A stretch of DNA of 64,000 bases from Macrostomum lignano. Its lineage: Eukaryota. The notes below the pieces were generated by a model. The model was not told where the DNA came from and did no database searches. It saw only the letters and a program-made list of their open reading frames with translations. A program made the translations under genes and the position numbers. Shown here piece after piece: positions 36,902 to 64,000 of this stretch (position 1 is its first letter; each line of letters opens with the position of its first letter). The stretch covers positions 155,166-219,165 of the forward strand of contig NIVC01001948.1 of NCBI GenBank assembly GCA_002269645.1, in the 5' to 3' direction.

Positions 36902-36936
<35 letters not shown>

Positions 36937-39900
36937 TTATAAAGCAGTGTCTATAGAGGGCACTAAATCTCTAAAGCAACACCTGAGTGTCTCGAGATCT
37001 ATGAAGCAACATCTGACATCTCTATGAGTGTCTTTAGATCTATAAAACAACGTCTATTAGGGTATCTAGATCTATAAAGCAACATGTCTATAAGTGTCTC
37101 TAGATCTATAAAGCAACATGTCTATAAGTGTCTCTAGATCTATAAAGCAACATGTCTATAAGGGTCTCTAGATCTATAAAGCAACATCTACAAGTTAAGT
37201 GCCTCTAGATATATAAAGCAACATCTACAAGTTAAGTGTCTCTAGATCTATAAAGCAACATCTACAAGTTAAGGGTCTCTAGATCTATAAAGCAACATCT
37301 AGAAGTTAAGTGCCTCTAGATCTATAAAGCAACATCTACAAGTTAAGTGTCTCTAGATCTATAAAGCAACATCTACAAGTTAAGTGCCTCTAGATATATA
37401 AAGCAACATCTACAAGTTAAGTGTCTCTAGATCTATAAAGCAACATGTCTATAAGGATCTCTAGATCTATAAAGCAACATCTATAAGTGTCTCTAGATCT
37501 ATAGAGCAACATCTACAAGTTAAGGGTCTCTAGATCTATAAAGCAACATCTACAAGTTAAGTGTCTCTAGATCTATAAAGCAACATGTCTATAAGGATCT
37601 CTAGATCTATAAAGCAACATCTACAAGTTAAGGGTCTCTAGATCTATAAAGCAACATCTCTATAAGTGTCTCTACTTACACAAAGCAAATCATAAAAGAC
37701 TCGAAAATATTTAGATAATAATTATTAAAACGAAGGTAAACCGACTGCTCTCCAACTGACAGGTCGCTGGCCGTTCGCCCTGAGCGAGCAGCAACTGGAC
37801 AGCCGTCGCCGAGGCCTAGAAAAATATCTGGAACGCGTCTGCGCTGTCCGCGTCATCGCTGAATGCTCGGCTATGCAGGAGTTTCTAACCAGCTCCGATC
37901 CGCATGCTGATGTAGAAATGAAAGTGCTGCTACCAGATCGAAGATTAGTTGCTATCCGGTGTGGCCGAACTGAGAAAGCTATTAACGTTGTATCGCTAGT
38001 GCTGGACAAGGCCGGCTTGTCAACGCCTGCCCAACAGCAGCAGCAGCAATTGTTGCGCAACTCTTTTGCGCTATTCGAAACCGAAGAAGAGGGATTCGAT
38101 AGGCGGGTTGCCGACTCTGAGCAGCCGCACGCTCTGTATGTGCAAAATTATTGCAGCTCGGCCGTGTCAGCCGCTACCTGCCTGCTGCTCAAACGGTGGC
38201 TGTTCAGTCCCTCAGCTGAGGCTGCCCTGATCTCGGCTAGTAGCGCCGCCCTGCACTTGCTGTGCGCTCAGGCTGTTGAAGAGGCCTGTCAGGTACTTTG
38301 TAGCTTTCGGGTCTTTGTATCTAATCAGTGGTCTTTGTAGCTTTCGGGTCTTTGTATCTAATTAGTGGTCTTTGTAGCATTCGGGTCTTTGTATCTAATC
38401 AGTGGTCTTTGTAGCTTTCGGGTCTTTGTATCTAATCAGTGGTCTTTGTAGCATTCGGGTCTTTGTATCTAATCAGTGGTCTTTGTAGCATTCGGGTTTT
38501 TGTATCTAATCAGTGGTCTTTGTAGCATTCGGGTCTTTGTATCTAATCAGTGGTCTTTGTAGCATTCGGGTCTTTGTATCTAATCAGTGTTCTTTGTAGC
38601 ATTCGGGTCTTTGTAACATTCGGGTCTTTGTATCTAATCAGTGGTCTTTGTAGCATTCGGGTTTTTGTATCTAATCAGTGGTCTTTGTAGCATTCGGGTT
38701 TTTGATCTAATTAGTGGTCTTTGTAGTTTTCAGGTCTTTGTTTGTATCTAATTAGTGGTCTTTGTAGCTTTCAGGTCTTTGTTTGTATCTAATTAGTGGT
38801 CTTTGTAGCTTTCAAGTCTTCGTATTGATTTAATTAGTGGTCTTTGTAGCCTCTATCTTTTTGGATTTTCCCAATTCGCAGTCTTTGTAGTATAGTTTCA
38901 CTCTCTGTGTTTCTACATTTCTACATGCTCCAGTATTTGTTTCCTTCATTTGTTTTGTTTACAAATGTGACACCCTCTCCCTACAGGGCTTCCTCATACA
39001 GGCCACTCCGGAGATGAAGCGCGCTCAGGAGCGCCTTGCCGAGCCGGGTGGCGAAGCCGAATACCTCAGCTTGGCCAGGCAACAACCTGGCTACGCCGAG
39101 GTGGCGTTTCCGCACTGCCCCTGCGACGCTAGAAAAGAGGGCCGCGTCATTCCACGGCTGGGCTGGGCGGCTCTGCGACTGCAGGCAGCCGACGAGATTG
39201 GCGCGCCGTTGGAACAGGTGAGACTTCAGAACGGACACTTCAGCATCTCTCACTTCCGGTTTTCATTGTTTACTCCAGTATCTCATTTCCGGTTTCCACT
39301 GTTAACTTCAGCATCCCTCACTTCCGGTTTCCACTGTTAACTTCAGCATCCCTCACTTCCGGTTTCCACTGTTAACTTCAGCATCCCTCACTTCCGGTTT
39401 CCACTGTTAACTTCAGCATCCCTCACTTCCGGTTTCCACTGTTAACTTCAGCATCCCTCACTTCCGGTTTCCACTGTTAACTTCAGCATCCCTCACTTCC
39501 GGTTTCCACTGTTAACTTCAGCATCCCTCACTTCCGGTTTCCATTGTTCAATTCAGCATCCCTCAATTCCGGTTTCCATTGTTTATTTCAGCATCCCTCA
39601 CTTCCAGTTTCCATTGTTCACTTCAACATTTTTGACTTCCGGTTTCCATTGTTCACTTCAGCATCCCTCGCTTCCGATTTCCATTTTTCCCTTCAGCATC
39701 CCTCACTTCCGGTTTCCATTAATAACTTCAGCATCCCTCACTTCCGGTTTCCACTGTTAACTTCAGCATCCCTCACTTCCGGTTTCCACTGTTAACTTCA
39801 GCATCCCTCACTTCCGGTTTCCACTGTTAACTTCAGCATCCCTCACTTCCGGTTTCCACTGTTAACTTCAGCATCCCTCACTTCCGGTTTCCACTGTTAA

Positions 39901-48200: not shown

Positions 48201-49409
48201 TACGGGTCGCTGTGTAACAAAAATTGCGTTGAAATGAATGACGACACCAATGGTCACTACAGTTGCTCGAAGGATGGCGAAAAAGTCTGTCTTGATGGTA
48301 CGTGAGTTGCTGAAAATTTGGGCCTGTGGGTTTGCAGACTTTAAAAGCTTTCGTGTGCTTCACCTTTGCCAGCCTATTAGGATTAAAATGATGAAATCGA
48401 TGATTCAGAGAAATAATTAGCCTAATTTTACTTTTTTTAATCCTGCAATGAACTATTTTGCTACAAACAAATAGCTGAAAGAATACGTTAAACCATGTGT
48501 AACTGTATAACTAACGGTCTTTGTAGCTTTTAAATCTTTATGTTTATTACTCGTAATTAGGGGTCTTTGTAGTCTTTGTGTTCTTTGACTAGCGGTCTTT
48601 GTAGCTTTCAAGTATTTGTGTTTATTACTCGTAATTAGGGTTCTTTGTAGTCTTTGTGTTCTTTGACTAGTGGTCTTTGTAGCTTTCAAGTATTTGTTTT
48701 TATTACTCGTAATTAGGGGTCTTTGTAGTCTTTGTGTTCTCTGACTGGTGGTCTTTGTAGCTTTTAAATCTTTATGTTTATTACTCGTAATTAGGGTTCT
48801 TTGTAGTCTTTGTGTTCTTTGACTAGTGGTCTTTGTAGCTTTCAAGTATTTGTTTTTATTACTCGTAATTAGGGGTCTTTGTAGTCTTTGTGTTCTTTGA
48901 CTAGTGGTCTTTGTAGCTTTCAAGTATTTGTGTTTATCTTGTAGTAATAGATAGCAGGTGGTGCAATTATTGTTTAGTCCCAAGCTTTTAGTACGGCTTC
49001 CCGAGGTACAATTTACTCTCGCTTTAGTTGACGTCCCTTACTTATAATATACGAAGTTGCATAATATTAACTCTTTCGGTTCACTTAATCAAGTTGATTA
49101 GTTTACTGTCATCACTTTTATATCATTTAACTTTTTCGAATAGATCCTGTTTCAATATTTTGTAAGTAATATTTTATTCGCTGTATCTATCATATTTAAA
49201 TTTAATTTGTTTTTCTAAAATTCTGAATTCTGAACGCCCCAAAAGTTTCACGTAACGTTCATGTTTATTTTGTACCATCAATTTTCCATTTATCTAACCA
49301 CTAAATCATCAGAAGGCGTGTAAGCAAATTTTGTCCAAAACCACAATTTACAGGTTGGACCAATGTCGAAAGCGACTGTAAAGTCCCTTCGTGGTGCGTT
49401 TGGTGCTGA
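45245..49409 (+). CDS. Delta/Serrate-like protein: signal peptide + C2(MNNL)-like + DSL domain, no EGF repeats or TM found; 227 aa, 6 exons
   Basis: Exons 45245-45301, 45608-45780, 46639-46759, 46846-46985, 48161-48297, 49354-49409 = 684 nt, phase-consistent. Signal MQQVKLNYFICLLWLLFHL. C2-like ELSIKFIQYENKDAKLADGVFC...DCDPIF, NPISF, LIVTVDDYD. DSL YRFICKTNFYGSLCNKNCVEMNDDTNGHYSCSKDGEKVCLDG|WTNVESDCKVP (6 Cys). The last exon and stop are less certain. Confidence 0.82.
45475..45550. repeat. Hexamer microsatellite (ATGAGY)n, DSL intron 1
   Basis: Direct reading. Confidence 0.9.
45910..46205. repeat. 20-bp minisatellite (TTTGTCACTCAGATGATCAA), DSL intron 2
   Basis: Tandem periodicity. Confidence 0.88.
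46287..46600 (+). mobile_element. tRNA-derived SINE, copy B (full length), DSL intron 2
   Basis: Pol III A box (TAGCCTACTGG) and B box (GGTTCGATTC). CORE/Meta-like middle (ACACTTAACTCTGCATTGCTTCAGTTCACCCAGCTGTAAAAT). AT-rich tail. Two further copies in the window. Confidence 0.88.
47045..48060. repeat. 15-bp minisatellite (GGCTTTAGCACCAGG), DSL intron 4
   Basis: Tandem periodicity; lies between verified exon boundaries 46985 and 48161. Confidence 0.95.
48515..48935. repeat. 78-bp tandem repeat, DSL intron 5
   Basis: ~5.5 copies; contains the GTGGTCTTTGTAGCTTTC core also seen in SNX27 intron 3. Confidence 0.9.
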
Positions 49410-50011
49410 TGCTGACCGATAGCACATGTACATTTTGCTACGCGTGTTCGCCTTCGGTTGGATGTTGGCCAAAAGCTAACAGCTTTTATCTAATAATCAC
49501 CATCTGGCAAACTTGTAGACCATCTATGTTCGTCACTGCGCACTGTAGGCGTACTACGAGCGTATTATATCTATGAGGTTTTTCTGGAATCATCCGTGTA
49601 GTTCGTAATACACTGCTGAACTTCCACTGGGTTAATTAAACCAATGATGTCAGTACCAACTTACCAAGACAAGAAAGTTTATCTCTATAAAGTTCACTTA
49701 GACATTGAATTGAATTGTCTAAACTTGTATGTACGTCTAGTATATATTCGCTTTAAAAAATGGCATTTTAATTGTTTTGAAATTTTGTTTACTCGTGTTT
49801 GATCGATTTTTATGACTTAATGATTTTTAGTAGCTGCATGGAGCAGTACATCTTAGCCGCCTTTGGGGTCCGGTCGAAACACACGTATAGAAAAACTGGA
49901 AGAATGATCCTCAACTAAACAGTCGCACAGAGACAGACGGACACTTACAAGACTCACTAAGACCTTGGCACCTCAAAAGACCTGCTTTGAGAACTTGAAG
50001 AAAGGATTCTG

Positions 50012-50537
50012 GGGGGTGTTTCTCGAAACTCACGTAAGTTCTATGGTAAGTTAGATCGTAAGAAAGAAATTTACGTGTAGCGTAAGTTTGCTCGTAAGAC
50101 GCTTTCTCAAAACTCACTTAGACTTTGCGTGGCTTACGCTGTTCGTAAGTCGTATCTGAAACGAAAAGTTGCATGTCTATGGTCATAAATCTGCAAATAT
50201 CTTTACTTAGTCTATCGTAAGTTGCTTTCGAGAAAGACCCACCTTCGATAAAGTTTAACTTGACTTGGTTTGACTAAAGCTTCACGTACTATGCGATTAG
50301 TGCTTAAGTGCGTCTTACGACTGATACCGAGCAGTCGTAGGGTTAAGATCAACCTTACGAAAGACCATAGACATACGAACGTTTCGAGAAACAGTCTTTT
50401 GCGCAAAGTTACGAACTCGTAAAGTTGCGATCAATCTTACGCATAGCTAACTTGCGAGCCCTTCGAGCAACCCGTAAGTGTAGCTTACCCAACTTACGTC
50501 TATGGTCGATCGTAAGTTACTTTCGAGAAAGACCCCC
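50012..50537. mobile_element. 526-bp non-autonomous DNA transposon (PIF/Harbinger-type MITE)
   Basis: 17-bp TIRs GGGGGTGTTTCTCGAAA / TTTCGAGAAAGACCCCC (1 mismatch). 3-bp TSD CTG at 50009-50011 and 50538-50540. Internal CGTAAG/CTTACG motifs. Confidence 0.85.
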
Positions 50538-50614
50538 CTGGGCCGCATATAAACCCTTCTCTAGCTTAAGGAACATAATAATAATAGAAATAATTATAAT
50601 ATAATTATAAAAAT

Positions 50615-50912
50615 AAAAATAATTGATTACACCTGCCCCGATTGGGCCAGATGTGCAACCGACAGCTCAGCCGCAGCTATTGCGCGGCGCATCTGAAGGC
50701 TGCGTATGGCTCTTCAGTCCAAGGACTGGGGGGGGGGGGGTCGCCACACACCCTCAATTATCCCAGCTCATGCTGGCACCCATTTTACAGCAATTTGTGA
50801 ACTGAAGCAAAAATTAATGCATGGTTTAAGTGTCTTGCTCAAGGACACAAATTGTTTCACTGTGGTCGAGCATCGAACCTCCTACCTTTAAATCACTAGG
50901 CTACAATCCTCT
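50615..50912 (-). mobile_element. tRNA-derived SINE, copy C (head internally deleted)
   Basis: Near-identical body to copies A and B. Confidence 0.85.
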
Positions 50913-51154
50913 ACAACACAATAACACGATAACAACAAAATACGCTGTTAGGTTCTTAAGCAGTCCGGAAGCTCATGCAGGAGCTACAGCAAAAACGTAC
51001 ATTAACTTTAAAAGTAACGTCCGATGGGCGCTATAAATAGTTATTGCATTAGAGTCACGCGTAAACAATTCGAAAAGCTATTTAAACACCTTTCTGTTTA
51101 AAAGCTCCAATGGTAAGATAGAAATAATTTTTCCAACTAAAGATTCCTCAAGCT

Positions 51155-54100
51155 ATGGCTACCATTGTGGACATCAGCCAGGGAAGAGTTTCAATGGCTT
51201 CTCTGCTACCCGAATTGCCAGTTGAGGATGGCACCGTCAGGATCGATTCAAGAGCCTTCAAAGTCGAGGCGAGGACCCTCGTAGCAGCGATTCGAAATCC
51301 GCAACTACGCCAACAATGCATCGATGAAATCTGTTTGACGGTGTCAAAAAAGGACTCGTTCACATCCGCACAGCGACAGCTGCTGTTCGACTGGTCGCAG
51401 TCGGCCGACCCTTGCAGCCTGGCTGACTTGGCCGGCGCAGTGGCCAAAGAAGGACATTTTGAATATGCAGAAATGTAAGCAATATTAGTGTATTTATACT
51501 TTTTTACTCATAGTTTTCTTAGCCAGAAATGCTTAATATTATTATTTTAGTTTTTCATAGGATGTAATTCTGTCTAAACTATCTCTACAACCCCTATCTT
51601 ATCTGAGTTTGAGGAGAGCAGCTTATGGTGAGTATGAATAGAAATACAGCTCTACAACCGCGGTACTTTGAACCATAGACTAAACTTCAGATTTGTAGGA
51701 GAATGATATATTCCTGCACGGTCACGAGTGCGGGAATGACATCTGCACGAGTGCGCGCTAGCGCACGAGTGCACGATGTCCTTCACGCACGAGTGAACGT
51801 GAAGGAATTCCATTGTCGGATGATTCATCGTGCAGGAATGCACAAAACCGTGCAGGAATGCATTTCTGCGCCTAATGCTTTTTCAGTGAGATTTTACCAT
51901 AGACATCCATTCCTGCACGCAAAAGAGTGCAAGAATGCCATTCTTGCATGGAAAATCAGCCGACAATATTCTTTCTTTTACTGCGATTTTTACTCTTTTT
52001 CTGATTCTTTGAAGACTCACAAGTGTAGGCTACTTTAGAGATGCTCAAAAAGGCATAAATGCTCAGGAAGACCCAGGCAATGAAATAATAGTACGTTAAT
52101 ACCCATGCTTTAGGGGCGTTAATGGGAAAATCAGAGGGCAATAATTTCTCATTAACTGCCCGCTAATTTGCATTAAAGTAAGTTTAACATAGACAATCGG
52201 GCGTTAAATGTCATTGACATATGGCCAAGCATTCTTAAATTGCTGACACTATTCATTGTCTATGGCCAAAAAGCAATCCTTCACCAATAACGCGACTGTG
52301 CAGTGAATCCCAAGCCGTGCTGTCAATTCCAACCACCGTGCTTTAAATTCCCGCACGTATTCAACTTATTAAATTTATTTAAGTCTACCTAAGCTACTGG
52401 TCTAATTCTACCTGAGCTAATGAGCTAATCCTGCCTAAGCTACTGTCTCAGTACCTGAGCTACTGACCCAATTCTACCTGAGCTACTGAGAAAATTCTAC
52501 CTGAGCTACTGACCCAATTCTACCAGAGCTACTGACCCAATTCTACCTGAGCTACTGACCCAATTCTACCTGAGCTACTGACCCAATTCTACTTGAGCTA
52601 CTGAGAAAATTCTACCTGAGCTACTGACCCAATTCTACCAGAGCTACTGACCCAATTCTACCTGAGCTACTGACCCAATTCTACCTGAGCTACTGACCCA
52701 ATTCTACCTGAGCTACTGAGAAAATTCTACCTGAGCTACTGAGAAAATTCTACCTGAGCTACTGACCCAATTCTACCTGAGCTACTGACCCAATTCTACC
52801 TGAGCTACTGAACCAATTCTACCTGAGCTACTGACCCAATTCTACCTGAGCTACTGACCCAATTCTACCTGAGCTACTGACCCAATTCTACCTAAGCTAC
52901 TGAACCAATTCTACCTGAGCTACTGACCCAATTCTACCTGAGCTACTGACCCAATTCTACCTGAGCTACTGACCCAATTCTACCTGAGCTACTGACCCAG
53001 TTCTACCTGAGCTAGTGAACCAATTCTACCTGAGCTACTGACCCAATTCTACCTGAGCTACTGACCCAGTTCTACCTGAGCTACTGACCCAATTCTACCT
53101 GAGCTACTGACCCAATTCTACCTGAGCTACTGACCCAATTCTACCTGAGCTACTGACCCAATTCTACCTGAGCTACTGACCCAATTCTACCTGAGCTACT
53201 GACCCAATTCTACCTAAGCTACTGAACCAATTCTACCTGAGCTACTGACCCAATTCTACCTGAGCTACTGACCCAATTCTACCTGAGCTACTGACCCAAT
53301 TCTACCTGAGCTACTGACCCAGTTCTACCTGAGCTAGTGAACCAATTCTACCTGAGCTACTGACCCAATTCTACCTGAGCTACTGACCCAGTTCTACCTG
53401 AGCTACTGACCCAATTCTACCTGAGCTACTGACCCAATTCTACCTGAGCTACTGACCCAATTCTACCTGAGCTACTGACCCAATTCTACCTGAGCTACTG
53501 ACCCAATTCTACTTGAGCTACTGACCCAATTCTACCTGAGCTACTGACCCAATTCTACTTGAGCTACTGACCCAATTCTACCTGAGCTACTGACCCAATT
53601 CTACCTGAGCTACTGAACCAATTCTATCAGCCGAGGTACCGAAATTTAGGACTGAAACTTACATGTTCGCAGGCAAAAATGTTTTCCATTGCTATTGTCA
53701 CTTAATTAAAATAATTATAAAGCTGATGTAACCGCCCTTGTCGCCTGTCCGCTCCGTTGAGAGACGAACGCATGACTAGAGGGGGGCAATGACCGTAGGC
53801 TGCCTATGACCGGGCAATGACCTGACGGACCTCCAGCACCAGACTGTCCCGCCCACATGATTGATAGCTTTGGTAGCGCTTCGTGACCAGAGGGCCAAGG
53901 ACCCACATGGACCCCACCTGTAGCCAAGGTGCAATAGTTGGTCACTCGGTCATAGTATGACCGAGTGGCTGCCACAACTCTATGTGACCTGGCGCACCTG
54001 GATCTTTCTACCAGACCTCTCGAGGCTAGAGCCCCGCCTGGGATGGTTACCAGGAGATTTAGGCTAACAGGGGAGACACATGCAGCCGAGTACAGGGACT

Positions 54101-57100
54101 CTGCTTGGGGCATGATCGGGAACTCTGGGATCAATCCTGGAGGATTTCTCAGCAGGGGATCCTTTTTGGCTGTGAGCAAGGCTGACTTGCGACTTTGATT
54201 ACTAAGAGTAGTATGAGGCGAACATGTACTGTCTATAGTTTAGATTGCTCAGGGCGAAGGGACGCGTCAGCATGGGGTTGCAACCTTCCTACTGCCATTC
54301 TGTGCCAAGACTCGCTAATCCCTCTACTGCACGCACCCGCGGCCCCGCAGCACGCACTCACAGGCGGGCTTTGCACGAGGAGAGGCCATTAGCTTACCCA
54401 ACTTCCTTATGCTTTGCCACCCCGGGAGAAAGGCTTTAGCAAGCCATGGGTGAAATGATGGTGAAAGAGTGAATAATGATGAGGTTAGTTAATAGTTAAT
54501 ATTTATGCCCTTAGGCAAATAATCAGGCAATTAGGCGGCTTCACTATTGAGTAAAATACAGCAAAAAGTTACGGTATCACAATTGGCTCAGCTCTCTAGT
54601 CAAGCAATGGAAAATTCATTATTCACAAGGCAAACCCCGGATAAGCAAAGGCGATTAGAGCACAAATTAGTAACATGAACTTACCGGCAGCTGCACAGAG
54701 AGAGAGAGAGGCGGAGTAACCGAGGGCGGCCGTAGGCTGCAGTCAGGCAGACAGTGAAGCGGCGATGCGCTGAGGCGACGAGGCGCTGATGTAGATCAGG
54801 CGATGCTGATGATGCTGGGCGGTATCAGACCGCTGGCCGATAGGCGAGCTCGCTTGGGGAGCTGAAGATAACTTGGCGGTAACAGACCGCGGACCGGCAG
54901 GGGTTCGTCTTATAGGCGGGAAGGTCAGAGCAGTGTCTGACCGCAAGTCCAAAGAAGGACGAGGAGACGAACAGGTCGAAACGTTTTAGCATTCTCCTGC
55001 CGAAATCGCTTCCTTATATAGCCTTCCCAGCCGCCGCTCCAAGGTCGTTTCCATGACTCCCTCTCTCTGATTGGCTGCCGGCAGAATGACGTCAGAATGA
55101 GTCATGATGAGAAGCATGAGACCGGCATAGCAACATGAGAAATGGGAGAATTGCGCAATCCGGAGGTGGGGTGGGGGGATAATTGGCGCAGCGGGAGGTC
55201 GCGAGAGTGTTGCGCAAGCAAACATTGAGAACAATGGGGCTGGGGTCGAGAACAAAGGAATTGGAAATCGGGGATAATTGGGGAGAATCGAGAACAATAG
55301 AAAAGCTAACATTGGGGAAAAGGTGATAATTAGGTGCGAAAACGAGAACAATAGAAAGAGAAAATCGGAGAAAATGTGATATTTGGTGGGGGTAAAGAGA
55401 ACAAAAGAATCAAAAACGAGAACAATAGAAGCGGAGGTGGGGTGGGTGTCGCATGAGAAATTTGGGGAGGAGAACAATGGCGTGAGAAAAGGTTGCGCAA
55501 GAGAGGGGGATGAGTCATCGATGAGTCATCGAGGGGACGAAGGGGTCACACGACTTGCGTCATCGTTTGGGAGTTTGAGAAGGGATGGGGTGACGGTGAC
55601 CGTGCAAAATACTGTAAGTAGACACAGAGAAAGGGGGGACAGAGCAGGAAAATAGGGCGAAAAGGGGCAAAAAGAGGGGAGACAGGAAGAGTACATAAAG
55701 AATAGGGAGGCGCGCAGGGGAGATAGGGTAGAGGGGGAGGTACAAAGAGAGAGGGGGAAGCTCCGGAAAGGCAAGTGTGGCGGCAGGGGAGACGGAGCCA
55801 AGGCAGCGGGGGGGGGGGCAGCAGAGCGGGAGTCTCCAGGCCTGGTCGAAGACCTGGCCGAGCCTCAACAGCTCTGTGCAGGGGGTGCACGGCGATAGGA
55901 GGCACTTTCGAAAAAGTTCCCCTGCCCTATCCCGCGACCAGAGCGTGGTTACATCAAAGCCCTCTTATCCCTCTTATAGTCCATGCGTGCGGTAAATTCC
56001 ATTGTCGGCTGATTTTCCATGCAAGAATGGCATTCTTGCACTCTTTTGCGTGCAGGAATGGATGTCTGTGGTAAAATCTCACTGAAAAAGCATTAGGCGC
56101 AGAAATGCATTCCTGCACGGTTTTGTGCATTCCTGCACGATGAATCATCCGACAATGGAATTCCTTCACGTTCACTCGTGCGTGAAGGACATCGTGCACT
56201 CGTGCGCTAGCGCGCACTCGTGCAGATGTCATTCCCGCACTCGTGACCGTGCAGGAATATATCAATCTATCTATGTCTATGGCTAAAACCAGAAGAATGC
56301 TTTGCCCATAAATCTATCACTAGGTTCCTTCGTGCGTAAATAGTCTATGGCACTGCGGCAATGGCAATAGTCTCTGCGCACTCGTGCCAAGACTATTTAC
56401 GCACTCGAAACCTAGAGATAAATCTACCATTAACCGCCCGCTAATTTCGATATTTCTTTCCTGCAAGCGGGCTTAAATCATGGATGAATGAATAGAATGG
56501 ATTGCTATTCTGGCTCTGGCTATTTTCGTTTTTGACTCTTTTGCATCCGGTTCCCCCCCGTGCCTTTTCATTGGTTAAATGTAGTCAATGGCATTAAAAT
56601 GTGCACAAGAATAAGTGCCCAGTGGGCACAAAGGTCATGGTACAATTGTTCGTCAAGACTGTTTCCCGCTTTCACTGCCTTCTGGACAAGATCAAATCGA
56701 TAGAAATCGCTGATCTCTCGTGTCTTCTCGATCGTCAGGTCGGAAGACGGGCGCTCCGGGTAAAATTTGCGTCCAGCGGAATTTGTTCCGGAAAGAATTC
56801 TGCCTGTGTTTGCAGCCTTGTAATTTTAAAGAAGTGCAGACACTAGAAGACACAGTTGCAGGGATTTTTCTCGGGTGGCAGAGAATTTGCTCAAAGTTTT
56901 CTATAAACTTTTATTCCTGCGAAAGGAGACTGGTTGCTCAAATTCTGATCTATTTCTCAGCTCTGAGCACTTGCTCCTCCAACTCAGAGCACAAGCATTT
57001 ACTCGTGAGCAACTGTTCACTTTACCCATACGGCCTATTCTATCAATTTATTTTCGTGATCTAATCATGAAAATATACCCTATGCCACGTAAGACTAGCA

Positions 57101-60100
57101 TAAACATCTGATGCCCCCTATTCTACTACTTACGAGTATTTACAGAATTTTTTTATAGTGCTATAATTAATATTTAAATTTTTATCAAATCCAACGCTAT
57201 TCATAAGATAAAACTTGTTCATACAAAAAAATAAACGCCAAAAAGTTTCTTTCCAATATTTCGATTGTGAATATGTTAATAAGTTAATCAAAATAAGTTT
57301 TTACGAAGTCCGTTAAACGCTGATAAAGAACATGATCGCACATTAACCGAATGTTGCCTAACACTGTAGACAGGAAGGCTGCTGTTGCAAATTGTGCAAA
57401 TTTCACTATTTCAATGCATTTTTACAGCCGCCTTCTAAATCGAGTTTGCACATGCAAGACGCATAACCGCTCCGTTTGGAATTTGATAGTTTGAAAATTA
57501 TGAATTTCGTTGCTAAACTGACCTCCAACAAAATTTGCACGGTATACGAATGTATAGAGTCCTTAATTTTCAGTTTTACATGTGGCTCGTACATGCCAAT
57601 TTCTATTGAAATGTGTTTAATTTAATTAATACGATTAAAGTAAAAAAATGTCATTGATCTACTCGTACATATACATTTACAGGCTTCTGAAAGGCATCGC
57701 AAATTCTGCGCAACGCGATCAAGGTCTCATCTTGGCATCAAAACAAGCCGTAGATGCTCAGCAGTGGAAAGCGTCTGCCTACTTGTTGCGACGAGTTAAA
57801 AACGAGCAGACAAGAAGACAGCAATGTCTCGAGTTAGCAACTCTCGCTGCTATTAATGGCTGGATGGAATTGGCTACCGCCTGCTGGGAGATAATCTCCG
57901 ATTCCAGTTCACCGGGCCCCGACCTTTGGCAAAGCTGCGCCGATCTCGCCCAGAAAGCTGCGTCAATGGGTCAATTCGACATTGCATCTTATTTTTGCCA
58001 AAAGCTGACAATTCAGCAGCGGTCTCAGTTTCTTAAAACTTTTGTTTCGAAAATTAATACTCGTAAATGGGATTTTTCAGACGTCGAGAAATTTTTTGCG
58101 ATTTTTGCCAACAATGTCCCGGCTGAGACGATAGAAGTGTGCCGTCGTGCTCTGACAATTCAAGCTGCTGAGCAGGGGAGCTGGATTCTGGCACAATCTG
58201 TTCTGGCAGAGATTTCCTGTGCAAGCAAACGATCTGATACACTTAAGAGTATTTTTAATAAAATCAGTGGATGCAAAGGTTGCATCAGAGCGTTGTCTTC
58301 AATTATCGAAGATGCCGGAGCAAAATCAAAGATCAATTGCCGGTTGGCCAAGGCCACTGTCTCCTCCTGCCAGCGCTGCCAACAGTCACCAGCAGGGAGA
58401 CAGCAGCAGCAGTCAATAACGCAAATTCACCCAGAGTTTGTGCCCACTGACTCCCCTGTCGGCTGCCAGAGTCCAATTGATGCGGAGCAACGAAAAGCCT
58501 GGACTCTTCTGACTGTGGCTGACTATCTAGCTGAAGACGCAGAGGATGATCTTAAAGACGGCATCCGGCGCGAGGAAGTGAAGCTTTTAGTGAGGCGGAA
58601 GCTGTGGTACACAGCGAAACAGATTTCAGAAAGCATTATGAATCGAGACGAGCGCGATCAGAGTCTTATTGCTGCTGCTGAGTTTGCCATCGACTTTGAT
58701 CAGGCCGAAATGTCAAACTTGTTTCTGAGCGGAATGGCTGACACGGACAAGAAAGAAAATTGGCGCTCTAGAAAGGTGCAAAAGCTGTCTGATAAAGGAA
58801 AGCAAGATGTGGCAGACCGACTGAAAGACTGGTACCTGACTGAAGCAGAAGTTGCAGCAAGTAGTGGTCGGTTAGAGGCTGTTAGAGAAATTCTACAGCG
58901 TATACACGATTCGAATAGGCGAGACGAAGCACTTGCAAAAACTGCTGAAATTGCTGCTAACTTTGGCTACATGGACACTGCCGAAGCACTGGTGCGCGAG
59001 ATCTGCACAAGCCAGAAGAAGCTTGAGTGTTGCATAATAATTGCAAGGGGAATTCTTAATCCTCGCCCTCTAACGGCGATCAGGTGTGCCGCAGCTGCTG
59101 ATTGCATTGACACTATTAAAACTATATTTACTTCGGTCAGCGACGATGAAATGCGCGGCAAATGCTGTGTTGAGGCTGTAAAATCAGCTGTGTGCAGCGG
59201 CTTCCATGACACTGCCTGTCGGTTGTTACTGAGCTTCTCTGAGGCTCTACAAGCTGAATGTCTACTTGTTGCCATCCGCACAGCTAGCGCTCTTTGTGGC
59301 TTACACACTGTTAGGCAGCTCATGTTGGCAATAGTTCAATTAAGAAATATTCCTGGCTTCAGTTGGGAACTGTTCAAAAAAGTTCTGAAAGACATCTGCA
59401 ATAATCCAGAATTACGGAACCAGGTTTGCAAAGCATTAGTTAGTGCCTGTCTACGATGCGGCTTGTGGGTGCAGGCTCAAAATTATTTGAAATTCATTAA
59501 AGATGAGCGCATTATATGCATTTGTTGTGCTGATGAGGTGCGGCTGATGCTGAGCCAAGGCCAAGCCAAATTAGCTGCCAAGTTCATAGCTAACATTGAA
59601 AAAACACTGAAACATCTGATTGAGCATTGTTTAGTTGCCGGAGTCGACCTAATTTATGAGCAAGAGAGGCTGGAAACTGCTGTGCAATTTTTCAACTCTT
59701 ATCAGAGTCCGGACGCCGACAAGTATCGCTTTAGAGTTGCCCGGTTTGCCATCCAGTTTCGACTTTACCAGTACGCAGAAGGAATGGTCGATTCTATTAG
59801 AAACTGCGACATTAAAGACGCAGTCTATCAGGAAATCGCTGAACGCGAGATCGCACTGTGGACGAGCAACGAAGACGTTGAATTCGCTTCAAAATTGTCT
59901 GCGTTAATTAAGAAGCTTTCGAAGTATTGTAATCGCAAGGAATGTTTCAAGAGAGCTTCATTAAAAGCAGCAAGCCTTGGATTATGGACTTGCCTAAATG
60001 AGTTTGCCTTACAATATAACGACGAGGCTGAAAGATTCCAGGATGTGATGCAACAAGCCATCTATTCCAACCAGGTCGACGCAGTCGAGCCTATTCTGAA

Positions 60101-62928
60101 ATCAAGCATAAGCGCTGTAAATAGAGTTGACTTTCTGTGTAAACTAATTACTCGTAGTCTGACACATGAATTTCAGGATATTTTTACGTTACTCAGGAAT
60201 ATCCCAACGGAGGCGAATTGGATAATTGAAGCCGAAGATTTTCAGCGTACGCTAAATAACGCCTTAGTAACAAAGCCTAACAGTCACGACTTTGACAGAT
60301 TTTGCTCAAGGTTTAGTCAGAGCCGGTTGCTTAAAACATTTCATGCATGCATCGAGAGAGGATACATAACTCTTGCGCATCGCATGCAACCACATCTCCT
60401 AGAAGTTCACCGCACTAATAGCGCTGGTGAAACGGCGCTGATGCTATCGGCAAAGTTCGGACGTAGCGACCTGATATTGCCGCTGATTGAAGATGGCGCA
60501 TCGGTGACTCAGACAAATGCGAACGGACAAACAGCCCTATCGATAGCGTGTTTGCACGGTAAAGAGAAAGCAGTGAAAATGCTTCTAGACTTGGGCTCTG
60601 ACGTGAACCACTGTGACAGCGCTGGCCGAAGCTGTGCACAGTTGGCGGAATCGGCTAAGCACGAAGTTGTGCTCAAGTTGCTTTGGTGAGAGATACGCTC
60701 GTACGTCGTATATGTAGCTCATTTCACGTAGCTGTTTATGTCAGTTTGTGCATTGGTTTTTTATTTCATACTTTTCCGATTTCAGCTCTTGGCCGAATTT
60801 TGATCTTAGCAATTATTTTGTCGAAAAAAGTGCCGCGTTGACCGAGGCGCTGACTCAGTCGGGCTTCACGCAAGACCGGGTGGTCTGTCTGCCAAGAATG
60901 GCAAGCTTCGTATCAGAACTAGCGTCGGCGATCACTGGCGAGGACATGGAAATTGCTGGCAGCACAGCCGAAGGCTATGGGATGATTCCACCCTGTTTGG
61001 ACAGAATGGTGTCACCGGATTCCGACATCGACTGGCTACAAATTATAAACGGATGCGTATTACTCCTAGAAGATTTCTGCTCCTGCTTAGGACAGCAGAA
61101 CTTGGGGAGCCCCATCGAGGGTCATGTGCCGCTCTCGGCTCCTGTAGGTAAGAAAACTATGATTTTCACATTGAATTCTAGCGTATTATAGAATTGTTAT
61201 GTAAAATGAGCACTACTGTATGCTTTAATTTGTTAATGGAACCTGAAGAGAATAATCCAGTGCTCTTAAGTCCGTTTCACATTACCGCTAGTAGCACAGC
61301 AGTTGAAGGATTGTTCAAATCATTTTTAAAAACGTGTCTGAACCAACTGCACATTGATTTGAGCAGTCTTTGACCCGCGAAGCTACTGGCGGGAATGTGA
61401 ACCGGCATTTACTTTCAAAGTTGTAAACTGTGCGATGTTTTGTGTCATAGTAGTTTTTGACTACTGCCATTGATATGAGAGCTTGACCGAAATGGACCTC
61501 TTATAATTAGGCTTAATAACTGCCTAAATATGAACATAAATAAATTAGCGTTATTAACATGTTTCAACCCCACACAGGATGTCAACCTGCACAGACTTCC
61601 CCTGCTAAAGGAGTTCTTCCCCGCATGGATTTCTGCTGCGCTTTTCCTGTCTGCACAAGAGACTTATCCTTATTGCACCCCCAGCCCGAAAATCTCGTCC
61701 GGGCTTCGAGGCCAGGACGCACGTGTGAGCTGCGAATCAGCTTTAACAGCCAGGAGAACAGACTAGTACGAGGCTTTTACGAAGTGCAAGGGCACTTACT
61801 GATGATCATCAAGCACTGTTTCAAGAACACTCCATTAAAAGATTACTATAAATCGTACCACGCAAAGTCGCTATTGTTTCATTTAATTGCGCGACACGCA
61901 GAATCGGGGAATCGGTGTGGAAACCCACAAATTTGGCTCGCCTTTTCCACGAAGCACTTGGTATGGCGATCGAGTTTCTATCGGCGAGTATTTCCAAGGA
62001 TGTCGTTATGCCGCACTCGATGTGCCCAAGCGCACAGCTCTACATTAAAAATGCTGGCCTCGGGTACGGATTCGAAGACTCAAAAAAGGAAGCGGAAATA
62101 TCCCTGAAAGACCTCCAAAAAAGGACCTGGCGGTGTTTGATCCGATGCTAGAGTTTTTGCGTCCGTTGAGCTCGCAAGAGTTCAGGTTTCACCCGTTCAC
62201 TCTTCTGCCATTGCAGCGTGTTCGCCAAGGCGCTCTTAAAACGAAAAGACATCAAGACAGCACGGTGAACTTGCTGGCTAACTTGTACGAAAAAATCTGG
62301 CAAACTCTCACAGATTTGTCCAATGATGGCGAGTGTCCGAGCGTTGATCGTTTGATTGAGCGTTTAGAAACGCTGCCCAAAATTTGCCACTCTGCAGTCT
62401 GTTGCCTGAAGATAATGGCATATTGCAAGAGTGGTAGGTTGGATCAAGCAGACATTGTTTTAAGTTGTCTTAATGGTCACAAAGTTCAGCGCGGTTGGCA
62501 GCCTACTTCAGTTAGAGACGGCATCAAGTGGACAACGAAGCAGACTGGGCGTGGCGATTTTGCTTTCCAAGCAAAAGTGGCTTTCAATTTCCTTTTTGGC
62601 GAACTTTACGCAAAGTCTGTTTACAGCCAGACTATCTGAAAAATCTAAAACATCCCACGTCTACATTAACTTTCGATGCCTTTTTTGGAGTCTACAAGCA
62701 GAACTTCTGGGGGCTGGAGAAGTCTGTGTCGACGACTGGTATACTGAGATTCAAGCAGATGCAGATTTGGAGGAGCTGCTCACTTTAGCCAACTACTCAG
62801 ACAGTCACCAGCACCGGAATTTCTGCAAAGAGGAGCTAAAAAAGCTGCGCAAAGAAGGACGCGTCGTTTTGGAGGACTACGACTTTAAAAGACCTGCTGC
62901 GAGCACTTCTTTGAATGAAAGCAAGTGA
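51155..62928 (+). CDS. ~1680-aa protein: alpha-helical (TPR/ARM-like) solenoid + ankyrin repeats + Mab-21/cGAS-like nucleotidyltransferase + helical C-terminus (cGLR-like); 3 frameshifts in exon 4
   Basis: Exons 51155-51474, 57683-60685, 60786-61147, 61578-62928, with phases 2/2/1 matching. ANK: NSAGETALMLSAKFG, NGQTALSIACLHG, SAGRSCAQLA. NTase: EIAGSTAEG (60952-60978), SPDSDIDWL (Asp 61024 and 61030), RMDFCCAFP (Asp 61628), ELRISFNSQENRL, SYHAKSLLFHL, WKPTNLARLF. Single-base indels needed at ~61905, ~62120 and ~62595. Confidence 0.85.
51704..51967 (+). repeat. Left arm of a 264-bp near-perfect inverted repeat (intron 1 of the cGLR-like gene)
   Basis: Reverse complement of 56001-56264; one mismatch seen. 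The ORF track gives matching peptides on opposite strands. Confidence 0.92.
52385..53625. repeat. 23-bp minisatellite (AATTCTACCTGAGCTACTGACCC), intron 1 of the cGLR-like gene
   Basis: Tandem periodicity, ~50 copies. Confidence 0.96.
53724..55956 (-). mobile_element. 2233-bp solo-LTR-like insertion
   Basis: Perfect 10-bp terminal inverted repeats TGATGTAACC...GGTTACATCA (TG...CA) with a 4-bp TSD AAGC (53720-53723 and 55957-55960). GC/CpG-rich, with a Pol II promoter cassette on the minus strand. Confidence 0.75.
55014..55104 (-). promoter_or_regulatory. TATA + CCAAT + CRE + AP-1 cassette within the LTR-like element, antisense to the host gene
   Basis: TATATAA 55020-55014, CCAAT 55074-55070, TGACGTCA 55087-55094, TGAGTCA 55098-55104 (more at 55511 and 55522). 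Downstream donor G|GTAAG at 54685/54684. Confidence 0.55.
56001..56264 (-). repeat. Right arm of the 264-bp inverted repeat
   Basis: See 51704-51967. Confidence 0.92.
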
Positions 62929-64000
62929 CCAAATTGTTTTTCGAAGCATTAACTAGTAATGGCTTTAGAATGAAAAAACGCTATATAGAGTACCTTTGAT
63001 TGCTTTTGATTGCAGTTTTGTGAAGAAATGAATTAGTGCTACGGGGCTACGATACACGTTTTTCAGTTTCTGCTTATGTTGCCCTAAACTATGGACTAAT
63101 TTTTATTGAGTAGTAAGTTCGTTAAAGTTGGTTCAAATATTAATGCGAGTTTCTCTGTGGGTCAAATATTGCTCAAATCAATTTTTAACAGGCCTGGACC
63201 AACTGTACACGGAGTTGAGCAGTATTTTACTTGCAAAGCTGTGAACCGGCCTTTAGAGTAGATTTCAAAAATAACTAGCGAAAGACAACGGAAGTATATC
63301 TGTTGCCTACACATTGAGAAATTGACATTTGAATAAATATTAAATAAACTAATACATTATACTAATTTGCGTGTCCTCTTTATAGAAAAAAATTCTTTGA
63401 TCAATATCTTTATAAAATGTATTTTTCGAACTTATTAATCACTTTATACAGCAAAAATGTTATGCATATTACTTTTAAAAAGTACCGCAGTTGTTTTTTT
63501 CTTTAATCGTATCGTAAGCAAATTATTCTGAAGGAAAGCTATAGTCAAACTGAAAAATGCAAAGTAGTATCAAGTGTCGCGAGTAGGTTTTTGTTGTATG
63601 TATTCTATCAATGTAACAATGTCAATCTATTTTAAAGTGTTTGATTGTCTTCTTTTCTTGTACATTGGCATTCATACTCTATGAGCTGATTTTGATTATA
63701 TTCATTATTTCTTTGTTATAGCTCGTAATGCGTACGTTCTAAGAAATTGGTATTATTTAAATATTTACACAAATTTCTGTTTTCTCGCTTTTCCTCTGTC
63801 GATGTTGGTGATGATTTCGTGCTGTAACGATTGGCCTTCAGGCCGTAAGACGGTCGCTGAATCATTACAAACCTAGGAACTAAAATAGTTAAGTTAGTTT
63901 AACGAGAGAGTTTAACTTGAGACTGTTTATGTTTATTTAGTTATACGAGCAATCCTGTCACTGCACTTCAATACCGTACGGTATTGCATTATATGCATTT

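What the first reader, a model, noticed from the sequence alone, without database searches (positions are those of the whole stretch)
51155..62928. Giant solenoid-ankyrin cGAS-like receptor hidden across five separate ORFs
Seen: the 1013-aa ORF, the 5' exon at 51155 and the downstream ORFs splice in phase into one ~1680-aa protein. It has ~1000 aa of helical repeats, three ankyrin repeats and a Mab-21-fold NTase with GS-x-x-EG, D-I-D and a third Asp (MDFCCAFP). Established: this G[S]+[DE]h[DE]+D triad is the catalytic centre of cGAS/cGLR/CD-NTase cyclic-dinucleotide synthases. Inference: a signalling-competent innate-immune sensor whose large repeat scaffold recognises or is gated by a protein ligand rather than bare nucleic acid. 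I cannot tell from here whether this architecture has been described.
Basis: partly seen in the sequence, partly recalled or inferred. Interest (0 to 1): 0.85.

Follow-up and report, generated by a model that had tools for sequence, protein, structure and literature searches.

The report
Flatworm ankyrin-repeat cGAS-like receptor gene
This is a real gene of the flatworm Macrostomum lignano for a large ankyrin-type repeat protein fused to a cGAS-like enzyme. It is already in public databases and belongs to a published family, and its split into many reading frames here is most likely a sequencing-assembly artefact.

Summary
The window is Macrostomum lignano assembly GCA_002269645.1, contig NIVC01001948.1 (100% match to window 49187-64000). 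The finding is gene BOX15_Mlig024769, copy g2.

**Junctions.** All three proposed junctions are canonical GT-AG and in phase. They match the RNA-seq-guided public models, including the full-length 1676-aa sister copy g1 (PAA72057.1).

**ORF fragmentation.** The last exon does not splice into one frame. In this window it is broken by five private single-base deletions. The three other genomic copies carry the base at every one of these sites. The window copy has no private substitution across the 6.4 kb compared, so these are most simply unpolished PacBio errors in a four-fold duplicated block.

**Protein.** It has about 27 repeats of 33 residues, only the last three recognised by Pfam as ankyrin. 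These are followed by a Mab-21/cGLR nucleotidyltransferase: AlphaFold2 pLDDT 86, and the 50 best Foldseek PDB hits listed are MAB21L1, MiD51, cGAS, cGLRs or bacterial CdnE. A conserved ~225-aa tail follows. The GS / DxD / D triad is conserved across a large expansion sampled only from M. lignano.

**What is known.** Li et al. 2023 already catalogued ankyrin-fused cGLRs and cloned five M. lignano members, none among their 15 named active enzymes. Activity, ligand and downstream receptor remain untested.

The parts
51155..51474 (+). Exon 1 (ATG at 51155; residues 1-107, the last codon split across the junction)
   Evidence: Donor AAT|GTAAGC. The peptide MATIVDIS...EYAEM is identical to the N-terminus of the full-length sister-copy protein P0020/PAA72057.1.
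51475..57682 (+). Intron 1 (6.2 kb). It contains an element at 51700-56268 bounded by terminal inverted repeats, which holds a 23-bp x 54 minisatellite at 52384-53626.
   Evidence: Inverted arms 51700-51967 and 56001-56268, 268 nt, 99% complementary. Tandem array. The same sequence is present in sister loci L002, L004 and L005.
57683..60341 (+).
   Evidence: Part of the uninterrupted 1013-aa ORF. BLOSUM autocorrelation peaks at lag 33 (z = 5.2) and lag 17 (z = 4.1) against 500 shuffles. tblastn hits the 33-aa repeats upstream of paralogue P0001. Weak in-register BLASTP hits to the canonical ankyrin array of P0055 (best E = 0.018). No Pfam ankyrin hit here.
60342..60665 (+). Exon 2, last part: three canonical ankyrin repeats
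   Evidence: Pfam Ank_2 E = 7.8e-15, Ank_4, Ank and Ank_3, at ORF residues 899-1006.
60686..60785 (+). Intron 2 (100 nt). The apparent stop TGA at 60687-60689 lies inside the donor site GTGAGA.
   Evidence: Junction TTG|GTGAGA ... TTTCAG|CTC, in phase. The junction peptide VLKLLCSWPNF is present in P0003, P0019, P0020 and P0021.
60786..61147 (+). Exon 3: N-terminal helices and first strands of the nucleotidyltransferase core, with G-S (60958-60963) and D-I-D (61024-61032)
   Evidence: Translation. In the AlphaFold2 model, GS sits at the end of strand E56-60 and DID on strand E83-89. Conserved in 18/18 close paralogues.
61148..61577 (+). Intron 3 (430 nt). Its position is conserved in paralogue P0001.
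   Evidence: Junction TAG|GTAAGA ... CACAG|GA. tblastn of the window protein breaks at the same residue in L001.
61578..62928 (+). Exon 4: third catalytic Asp (61628-61630), Mab-21 helix-bundle lobe and the conserved ~225-aa C-terminal tail. In this window it is broken by five private 1-nt deletions at 61905, 62128, 62529, 62592 and 62899. Read as is, it stops at 62105-62107. The repaired frame stops at 62916-62918.
   Evidence: Frame changes mapped by tblastn with P0001. Adding four bases gives one open frame. In the four-way DNA alignment the other three copies carry the base at every site. P0003 and P0020 read through.
59187..62107 (+). Extent of the public gene model in this window: BOX15_Mlig024769g2, PAA62342.1, 796 aa, 'partial'. 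It ends at the frameshift-induced stop.
   Evidence: Locus L003 positions 1-14814 equal window 49187-64000 at 100% identity, and the gene lies at L003 10001-12921. P0021 ends ...HAESGNRCGNPQIW...KRKRKYP, the window's out-of-frame reading.

Best explanation
The locus is one of four near-identical genomic copies (g2) of the Macrostomum lignano gene BOX15_Mlig024769.

**Protein.** The intact protein is 1676 aa in sister copy g1. It has a short N-terminal segment, then a long array of about 27 repeats of 33 residues of ankyrin type. Only the last three repeats still match Pfam ankyrin models. A Mab-21/cGAS-like receptor (cGLR) nucleotidyltransferase domain with a complete GS / DxD / D active-site motif follows, then a family-specific conserved tail of about 225 aa.

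**ORF fragmentation.** The break-up of the last exon in this window comes from five single-base deletions private to this assembly copy. Most probably these are residual PacBio consensus errors that short-read polishing could not fix in a four-fold duplicated block. They are not splicing and not biological decay.

**Mechanism (inferred, not shown).** Like other cGLRs, the enzyme is probably held inactive until a ligand is sensed. Here sensing would occur through, or be gated by, the ankyrin-type array rather than a basic nucleic-acid groove. The enzyme would then make a nucleotide second messenger that acts on a downstream receptor. That receptor is unidentified in flatworms.
For: **Identity and gene model**
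- Window 49187-64000 equals NIVC01001948.1 at 100%.
- The cluster of P0003 holds g1-g4, including the 1676-aa P0020 with the same first exon and the same junctions.
- The public annotation is RNA-seq-guided: StringTie/TACO plus de novo transcripts (PMC5730564).

**Deletions as artefact**
- The four-way alignment shows 5 private 1-nt deletions in exon 4, plus 3 deletion events (4 nt) in the 3' flank.
- The window copy has no private substitution over 57600-64000.
- Copy g4 has its own private 1-nt deletion.
- The assembly is PacBio/Canu polished with Pilon, and has 180 Mb of blocks duplicated at 95% identity or more.

**cGLR domain**
- The motif spacing is GS + 20 residues + DIDW + 53 residues + MDF. 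This fits the published cGLR motif, except Ala where it has [QT].
- The triad is conserved 18/18 in close paralogues. In 26 diverse members: G 26, S 25, D 25, D 23, D 22.
- AlphaFold2 gives pLDDT 86.3 and pTM 0.87.
- All 50 listed Foldseek hits are Mab-21-fold proteins or bacterial CdnE, with E down to 4.8e-7.
- A family profile searched against PDB sequences hits only cGAS at E < 0.01.
- Pfam Mab-21_C passes its threshold in paralogues.

**Repeat array**
- Period 33.
- Paralogues carry 25-30 canonical ankyrin repeats in the same position.

**Family already treated as cGLRs**
- Li et al. 2023 cloned PAA68676.1, which is our P0009, and PAA93208.1.

**Core not basic**
- pI 6.55, net charge -2.
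Against: - No enzymatic activity is shown for this protein or any M. lignano relative. The five constructs cloned by Li et al. have an empty 'Note' field, the field where active enzymes are named.
- The best structural matches include MAB21L1 and MiD51, which are not known second-messenger synthases. TM-scores are only 0.45-0.56.
- For the window protein itself, Pfam Mab-21_C is just below threshold (23.0 against 24.1 bits). Pfam does not see the N-terminal Mab-21 domain.
- cGAS and STING are reported lost in flatworms (PMC4117786, PMC13563047), so a canonical downstream pathway may be missing. I could not search M. lignano for STING.
- I had no reads, so the artefact reading of the deletions rests on their pattern, not on read evidence.
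- The ankyrin ancestry of the N-terminal array is only suggestive (best BLASTP E = 0.018, no Pfam hit).
Confidence: 0.75

Rival explanations
1. The window copy (g2) is a genuine young pseudogene or truncated allele. The five single-base deletions are real mutations. This copy would make at most a protein ending at 62107, lacking most of the helix-bundle lobe and the tail, while copies g1 and g3 supply the function.
For: - The deletions are in the deposited sequence, and the public model is truncated there.
- The sequenced DV1 line carries extra chromosomes and redundant gene copies, which relaxes selection on any one copy (PMC5730564).
- Only two of the five deletions lie in homopolymers of 4 or more bases.
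Against: - Eight private deletion events and no private substitution or insertion in the last 2.1 kb. No private substitution over 57600-64000. This is not a natural mutation spectrum.
- The deletions continue into the non-coding 3' flank at the same density.
- There are no nonsense mutations, and the repaired frame stays open.
- Another copy (g4) shows the same kind of private 1-nt deletion.
- Short-read polishing is expected to fail in four-fold duplicated sequence.
Confidence: 0.1
2. The Mab-21 domain is a non-catalytic scaffold or nucleotide-binding module, as in MiD51 or possibly MAB21L1. The protein would work as an ankyrin-based adaptor, not as a second-messenger synthase.
For: - The top Foldseek hits are MAB21L1 and MiD51.
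- No M. lignano construct was named active in the published screen.
- STING is reported absent from flatworms.
- Li et al. note that Mab21L1 has a complete putative active site with no known product, so an intact triad does not prove activity.
Against: - The three acidic residues and GS are kept across a large, otherwise divergent expansion, in members down to 19-30% identity. That is hard to explain without catalysis or at least metal-nucleotide binding.
- cGAS, Sp-cGLR1 and bacterial CdnE score almost as well as MAB21L1 and MiD51.
- The published constructs lacked the ankyrin array and were offered only nucleic-acid ligands, so inactivity there is weak evidence.
Confidence: 0.2
3. The long model is a merged transcript. 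The repeat/ankyrin gene and the Mab-21 gene would be separate cistrons of a trans-spliced polycistronic unit, which is common in M. lignano.
For: About 7% of M. lignano assembled transcripts are polycistronic precursors (PMC5730564). Some family models look merged: P0006 carries a second cGLR unit, and P0030 carries a caspase domain.
Against: - The reading frame is continuous across the ANK-to-Mab-21 junction through a 100-nt GT-AG intron, with the stop codon lying inside the donor.
- The same ANK-then-Mab-21 order in one frame is found in many paralogues at 33-38% identity.
- Li et al. list M. lignano cGLRs with Ank_2 domains in the same polypeptide.
Confidence: 0.04

Closest known systems
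Macrostomum lignano ankyrin-fused cGLRs catalogued and cloned by Li et al. 2023 (e.g. PAA68676.1 = BOX15_Mlig016402g1, PAA93208.1)
   Same: - Same species.
- Same order of domains: ankyrin repeats, Mab-21 NTase, conserved tail.
- Same motifs: GS.AEGW, DSDIDW, DWAWRFC, NFRCLSWSLQAELL.
- PAA68676.1 is hit P0009 of the family search, E = 2e-296.
   Different: - Only 33-38% identical to the window protein, which is the divergent member of the set.
- The window protein's N-terminal array is about 900 aa that Pfam no longer recognises as ankyrin.
- Its accessions were not found in the parts of the paper's tables that are held. Those tables are truncated.
[quoted passage not shown] 2023)
   Same: A cGLR core with an appended repeat module thought to mediate protein or ligand interaction. 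These make up about 13% of catalogued cGLRs.
   Different: Different phylum. No detectable close sequence relationship: distant hits in my search were Mab-21 + TPR proteins at E about 1e-9 to 1e-12, matching only the helix-bundle region. None of these fusions has a known ligand either.
cGAS, Sp-cGLR1 (8gjy) and MB21D2 (7lt1): structurally characterised cGLRs
   Same: Same bilobed Mab-21 fold by AlphaFold2/Foldseek (E 1e-6 to 6e-5, prob 1.00). Same GS / [DE]h[DE] / [DE] triad on equivalent strands.
   Different: - 11-15% sequence identity and TM-score about 0.5.
- The core is not basic (pI 6.55). That cGAS is strongly basic is from my own knowledge.
- Extra Cys/His-rich insertion between the DxD strand and the third-Asp strand.
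- About 1100 aa of N-terminal repeats and a 225-aa tail.
MAB21L1 (5eom) and MiD51 (4nxu)
   Same: Best Foldseek E-values, 4.8e-7 and 9.2e-7. Same Mab-21 fold.
   Different: Those proteins are single-domain or membrane-anchored, with no established second-messenger product. The window family is a lineage-specific multi-copy expansion with appended repeats, a pattern more typical of immune receptors (inference).

Membership tests
cGAS-like receptor (cGLR), criteria of Li et al. 2023 (PMC9980059) | Active-site motif h[QT]GS - X8-20 - [DE]h[DE]h - X50-90 - h[DE]h | tested here: met
   I-A-G-S, then 20 residues, D-I-D-W, then 53 residues, M-D-F. The one deviation is Ala in place of [QT] before GS; paralogues have T or V there. 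The residues are conserved in the family.
cGAS-like receptor (cGLR), criteria of Li et al. 2023 (PMC9980059) | [quoted passage not shown] | tested here: inconclusive
   Helix bundle: Pfam Mab-21_C scores 23.0 bits against a cut-off of 24.1 for the window protein. It passes in paralogues, for example 28.4 bits in P0055. The family profile hits cGAS chains at E = 7e-4 over this region only. NTase core: no Pfam PF03281 hit in the family. It is found only in distant Mab-21 + TPR hits.
cGAS-like receptor (cGLR), criteria of Li et al. 2023 (PMC9980059) | Predicted structural homology to known cGLR/CD-NTase enzymes | tested here: met
   AlphaFold2 on a 26-sequence alignment gives pLDDT 86.3 and pTM 0.87. 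The 50 listed Foldseek PDB hits are all MAB21L1, MiD51, cGAS, Sp-cGLR1, MB21D2 or bacterial CdnE, with near full-length alignment and TM 0.45-0.56.
cGAS-like receptor (cGLR), criteria of Li et al. 2023 (PMC9980059) | Ligand-dependent synthesis of a nucleotide second messenger | not testable with these tools
   This needs biochemistry. Five related M. lignano constructs were screened by Li et al. and none is labelled active in Table S3.
cGAS-like receptor (cGLR), criteria of Li et al. 2023 (PMC9980059) | A cognate downstream receptor (STING or other) in the same genome | not tested
The literature reports loss of cGAS and STING in flatworms, but those surveys did not cover Macrostomum.
Ankyrin repeat proteins | Repeats of about 33 residues matching the ankyrin profile | tested here: met
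   This holds for the last three repeats: Ank_2 E = 7.8e-15, above the gathering score.
Ankyrin repeat proteins | The ~900-aa N-terminal 'solenoid' is also an ankyrin array | tested here: inconclusive
   For: period 33, z = 5.2; similarity to 33-aa GHFEIVKFLV...AAEKAA repeats in a paralogue; canonical ankyrin arrays at this position in P0055 and P0039; weak in-register BLASTP hits, E = 0.018. Against: no Pfam ankyrin hit. No structure was predicted for it.
Pseudogene | Frame-disrupting lesions together with other signs of neutral decay (substitutions, nonsense codons, mixed indels) | tested here: not met
   Frameshifts are present, but there is no private substitution, no nonsense codon in the repaired frame, and only 1-2-nt deletions, which extend into the flank.

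The most novel reading that the evidence does not exclude
M. lignano belongs to a phylum otherwise reported to lack cGAS and STING. It may have built a large innate-immune receptor repertoire from ankyrin-array-fused cGLRs. My search found at least 83 clusters at 50% identity with E <= 1e-30, and every strong hit I looked up is from M. lignano. On this reading, rapidly evolving 33-residue repeat arrays act as the ligand-recognition module, as repeat domains do in NLRs. The conserved C-terminal tail, or fused effectors such as the caspase domain in PAA93319.1, would couple the nucleotide signal to a STING-independent output. The window gene would be the most divergent, longest-array member of that repertoire.
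Probability: 0.2. Interest if true: 0.7.

Novelty: new member of a known kind. Interest (0 to 1): 0.3.

Why it matters
If these proteins are active, they would be cGLRs whose activation is controlled by a huge protein-interaction array rather than by nucleic-acid binding. They would also sit in an animal lineage where the canonical STING pathway is reported missing. That would make M. lignano, which is transgenesis-capable, a tractable system for asking what non-nucleic-acid ligands cGLRs can sense and what receives their signal.

As it stands the finding adds little. The protein is already deposited (PAA72057.1 / A0A267FFY4). The family and the ankyrin-cGLR architecture are already catalogued. 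The 'hidden across ORFs' aspect is an assembly artefact.

The practical lesson is that gene models in duplicated blocks of Mlig_3_7 carry uncorrected single-base deletions. Two of the four copies of this gene are truncated that way.

Tried and rejected
- **Short introns in the last exon.** Rejected. The homologous peptide is continuous across each frame change with no spare sequence, and paralogue P0001 has a single 488-aa ORF there.
- **An 8-bp tandem duplication (GAATCGGG/GAATCGGT) as the cause of the first frameshift.** Rejected. The sister copies show a single missing G.
- **First structure prediction (571 aa, 8 sequences).** It gave pLDDT 51.7. The Foldseek search with it was uninformative for the tail, with no hit at E < 0.06.
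- **Protein search with the 1015-aa repeat region.** It returned nothing, not even the identical database proteins, so that null is unreliable and I do not use it.
- **An HMM built from the paralogue's near-identical 33-aa repeats.** It was too narrow and gave only sub-threshold hits in the window protein.
- **DNA comparison of paralogue locus L001 with the window.** No similarity.
- **Literature searches for Macrostomum together with cGAS or STING.** No dedicated study found.
- **The window gene's accessions in Li et al.'s tables.** Not found, but those tables are truncated as held.
Full report
**What is in the sequence**

The region is eukaryotic. ORF listing shows a 1013-aa ORF at 57648-60689, a 107-aa ORF at 51155-51478, and a string of shorter ORFs in all three forward frames between 60748 and 62928.

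All are consensus GT-AG sites, and joining them keeps one frame. The 'stop' at 60687-60689 lies inside a donor site.

Pfam finds three ankyrin repeats at the end of the long ORF (Ank_2 E = 7.8e-15) and nothing else above threshold.

From 61578 onward the coding sequence is not one ORF, and it is not spliced. tblastn with the first homologue found shows the homologous peptide running through frames +2 (61577-61900), +1 (61915-62118), +3 (62130-62519), +2 (to 62596) and +1 (62590-62883) with no spare sequence between them. That homologue is M. lignano P0001, 34% identical.

Adding one base at each of four places gives a single open frame to 62928. As the sequence stands, translation ends at TGA 62105-62107, inside the helix-bundle lobe.

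**Identity of the locus**

A profile search returned 18 proteins, all from Macrostomum lignano. One of them (P0003, PAA83319.1, BOX15_Mlig024769g3) is 99% identical to the repaired translation.

Its 90% cluster holds four genomic copies, g1-g4. These include g1 = P0020 = PAA72057.1 / A0A267FFY4, a full-length 1676-aa protein. It starts MATIVDIS... and carries EYAEM|LLKGIANS, VLKLL|CSWPNF and SAPVG|CQPAQ, which are all three proposed junctions.

Locus L003, fetched for g2 (P0021, PAA62342.1), is 100% identical to window 49187-64000. So the window is GCA_002269645.1 contig NIVC01001948.1, and the public model of this copy spans window 59187-62107. P0021 ends with exactly the window's out-of-frame peptide.

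The annotation of this assembly is RNA-seq-guided (StringTie/TACO plus de novo transcripts; Wudarski et al. 2017, PMC5730564).

**Nature of the frameshifts**

I aligned the window with the three sister loci: L002 (g3, 99.1% identical), L004 (g1, 98.0%) and L005 (g4, 98.7%).

- Over 57600-64000 the window copy has no private substitution.
- It has five private 1-nt deletions in exon 4: 61905 G, 62128 G, 62529 G, 62592 T and 62899 C.
- It has three further small private deletions in the 3' flank, at 63313, 63332 and 63534.
- All three other copies carry the base at every one of these sites.
- Copy g4 has its own private 1-nt deletion at window-equivalent 61790, which explains its truncated 706-aa model.

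Eight deletions with no substitution and no insertion, spilling into non-coding flank, is not a natural mutation spectrum. The assembly is PacBio/Canu polished with Pilon, and 180 Mb of it lies in blocks duplicated at 95% identity or more. Short reads cannot be placed uniquely in a four-copy block, so residual consensus deletions are expected there.

I rate artefact at about 0.9 and a real truncated copy at about 0.1. I had no reads, so this rests on pattern. Only two of the five sites are homopolymers of 4 or more bases, and exon 2 has 35 such runs with no error. That points to a local low-quality patch, not a uniform error rate.

**The enzyme domain**

- **Motif.** The window sequence has I-A-G-S, 20 residues, D-I-D-W, 53 residues, M-D-F. 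This fits the cGLR active-site definition of Li et al. 2023, h[QT]GS-X8-20-[DE]h[DE]h-X50-90-h[DE]h, except for Ala in place of Q/T.
- **Conservation.** These residues are identical in 18/18 close paralogues. In a 26-member diverse set the counts are G 26, S 25, D 25, D 23, D 22.
- **Sequence evidence alone is weak.** Pfam Mab-21_C scores 23.0 bits against a 24.1 cut-off. Single-sequence and profile searches of PDB sequences hit cGAS, and at higher E-values MiD51, only over the helix bundle (E = 0.03 and 7e-4).
- **Structure.** An 8-sequence alignment gave a poor model (pLDDT 51.7). A 26-sequence alignment of the 348-aa core gave pLDDT 86.3 and pTM 0.87. In it GS sits at the end of strand 1, DID on strand 2, and the third Asp on a later strand.
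- **Fold comparison.** Foldseek against the PDB found 56 matches at E <= 0.001. The 50 listed are all MAB21L1, MiD51, cGAS, Sp-cGLR1, MB21D2 or bacterial CdnE (E from 4.8e-7, TM 0.45-0.56).

So the fold and the motif are cGAS-like. The comparison does not separate catalytic cGLRs from MAB21L1 or MiD51. I could not inspect coordinates, so the convergence of the three Asp residues is inferred from strand positions only.

**The repeat region**

The ~900 aa upstream of the Pfam ankyrin repeats show a sharp self-similarity peak at lag 33 (z = 5.2) and one at lag 17 (z = 4.1) against 500 shuffles. Thirty-three residues is the ankyrin period.

tblastn of this region hits a tandem array of near-identical 33-aa units (DQSNRDTCCIKAAEKAANSGHFEIVKFLVPQIN) just upstream of paralogue P0001. 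By eye these units carry the ankyrin GH.E[IV]VK.L[LV] helix. Other family members have 25-30 canonical ankyrin repeats in the same position (P0055, P0039). BLASTP of the window array against P0055 gives several weak in-register hits (best E = 0.018).

I conclude, with moderate confidence, that the 'solenoid' and the 'three ankyrin repeats' are one ankyrin-type array whose N-terminal part has diverged.

**The tail**

After the helix bundle come about 225 residues that are the most conserved part of the family (DWAWRFC, FTQ.LFTARLS, NFRCL.WSLQAELL, DLEELLTLA.YSD). They have no Pfam match and gave no significant fold match from the low-confidence model.

**Family and literature**

- An exhaustive HMMER search of 1.84 billion representatives found 491 proteins at E <= 1e-3 and 83 at E <= 1e-30.
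- Of the ten hits looked up, the seven with E <= 1e-60 are all M. lignano. Among the three weak ones (E about 1e-11 to 1e-12) one is also M. lignano, one is the annelid Lamellibrachia satsuma, and one carries no name. The weak hits scanned with Pfam are mostly Mab-21 + TPR proteins.
- Li et al. 2023 (PMC9980059) state that most platyhelminths have no cGLR other than Mab21-like proteins, and that 13% of cGLRs carry appended modules, including ankyrin and TPR repeats.
- Their domain table lists M. lignano cGLRs with Ank_2 domains.
- They cloned five M. lignano proteins (samples 89-93). These include PAA68676.1, which is my hit P0009, and PAA93208.1 of the same subfamily.
- The 'Note' column that names the 15 active enzymes is empty for these five.
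- The accessions of Mlig024769 itself were not found, but the tables are truncated as held.
- cGAS and STING are reported lost in flatworms (Wu et al. 2014, PMC4117786) and absent from Schmidtea (PMC13563047). I found no statement about STING in Macrostomum.

**How it most likely works**

Shown:
- One transcript-supported gene encodes an ankyrin-type array, a cGLR-fold NTase with an intact triad, and a conserved tail.
- The triad is under conservation across a large lineage-specific expansion.

Inferred:
- The enzyme makes a nucleotide signal when a ligand is sensed.
- The array is the sensing or gating module. The core is not basic (pI 6.55), and nucleic-acid ligands did not give named activity in array-less relatives.
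- The output acts on a receptor that is not yet identified.

A non-catalytic scaffold role, as in MiD51, remains a serious rival (about 0.2).

**Verdict**

The gene and its domain content are real and were correctly spotted from raw sequence.

- The 'five spliced ORFs' description is wrong for the last exon.
- The architecture is not undescribed.
- The protein is already public as a hypothetical protein.

The novelty class is a new, divergent member of a known kind, and the interest is modest.

Noticed in passing
window 51700-56268: An element bounded by 268-nt terminal inverted repeats (99% complementary) sits inside intron 1. It carries a 23-bp x 54 minisatellite at 52384-53626. The identical ORFs at 51703-52038 (+) and 55954-56265 (-) are simply its two arms. 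It is present in all four gene copies.
   Followed up: partly
window 57683-62928, compared with L004 (copy g1): All 52 substitutions between g1 and the window copy in exon 2 fall in the diverged repeat array (dN/dS 0.35, dS 0.036). There are none in the ankyrin part, one in exon 3 and none in exon 4, where my rough estimate from dS is about 16 synonymous differences. The 3' half looks homogenised between copies, by gene conversion or a recombination breakpoint.
   Followed up: partly
L005 (copy g4, NIVC01000911.1), window-equivalent 61790: Copy g4 carries its own private 1-nt deletion in exon 4, which truncates its public model to 706 aa (...EVQGTY). So two of the four copies of this gene are mis-annotated for the same reason.
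   Followed up: yes
L001 6850-9800 (upstream of paralogue BOX15_Mlig004872g1): At least 11 nearly identical tandem 33-aa ankyrin-like repeats lie in coding orientation upstream of the annotated 797-aa model, with the reading frame drifting along the array. The public model is probably truncated at its N-terminus, and the array looks recently amplified.
   Followed up: partly
protein P0030 = PAA93319.1 (BOX15_Mlig026614g1, 2111 aa), not in the window: Pfam shows ankyrin repeats, Mab-21_C, more ankyrin repeats and a C-terminal Peptidase_C14 caspase domain in one model. This is either a sensor-effector fusion or two genes merged from a polycistronic transcript.
   Followed up: no
protein P0006 (UniRef A0A1I8..., 1036 aa), not in the window: The C-terminus of this model runs into a second cGLR unit of a different subfamily (GSYSEGWG...SDIDVM). 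This is either a tandem gene merged into the model or a multi-cGLR protein.
   Followed up: no
window 61080-61650 (residues 95-149 of the 348-aa core): Invariant or near-invariant Cys and His lie between the DxD strand and the third-Asp strand across the family (C101, C103, G115-H116, C149). This could be a metal-binding insertion. Its position differs from the cGAS zinc ribbon (that comparison is from my own knowledge).
   Followed up: no
window 2824-10057 and many other sites up to 49000: The window is packed with minisatellites of 15-37-bp period. The largest is 28 bp x 252 copies (7.2 kb, GC 0.62, strong GC skew). They generate long spurious ORFs on both strands.
   Followed up: partly
window 235-1757: A retroelement fragment: reverse-transcriptase-like ORFs and a weak RNase H match (E = 5e-5, below the Pfam cut-off).
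   Followed up: partly
window 36256-38337 (+): Exon-sized ORFs with a PX domain (E = 3e-6) and a Ras-association domain (E = 7e-5). This is probably one sorting-nexin-like gene, interrupted by minisatellite-bearing introns.
   Followed up: partly
tool behaviour: The word-indexed protein search with the 1015-aa repeat region returned no hit at all, although identical proteins (P0020, P0003) are in that database. Nulls from that tool for long, repeat-rich queries should not be trusted.
   Followed up: no
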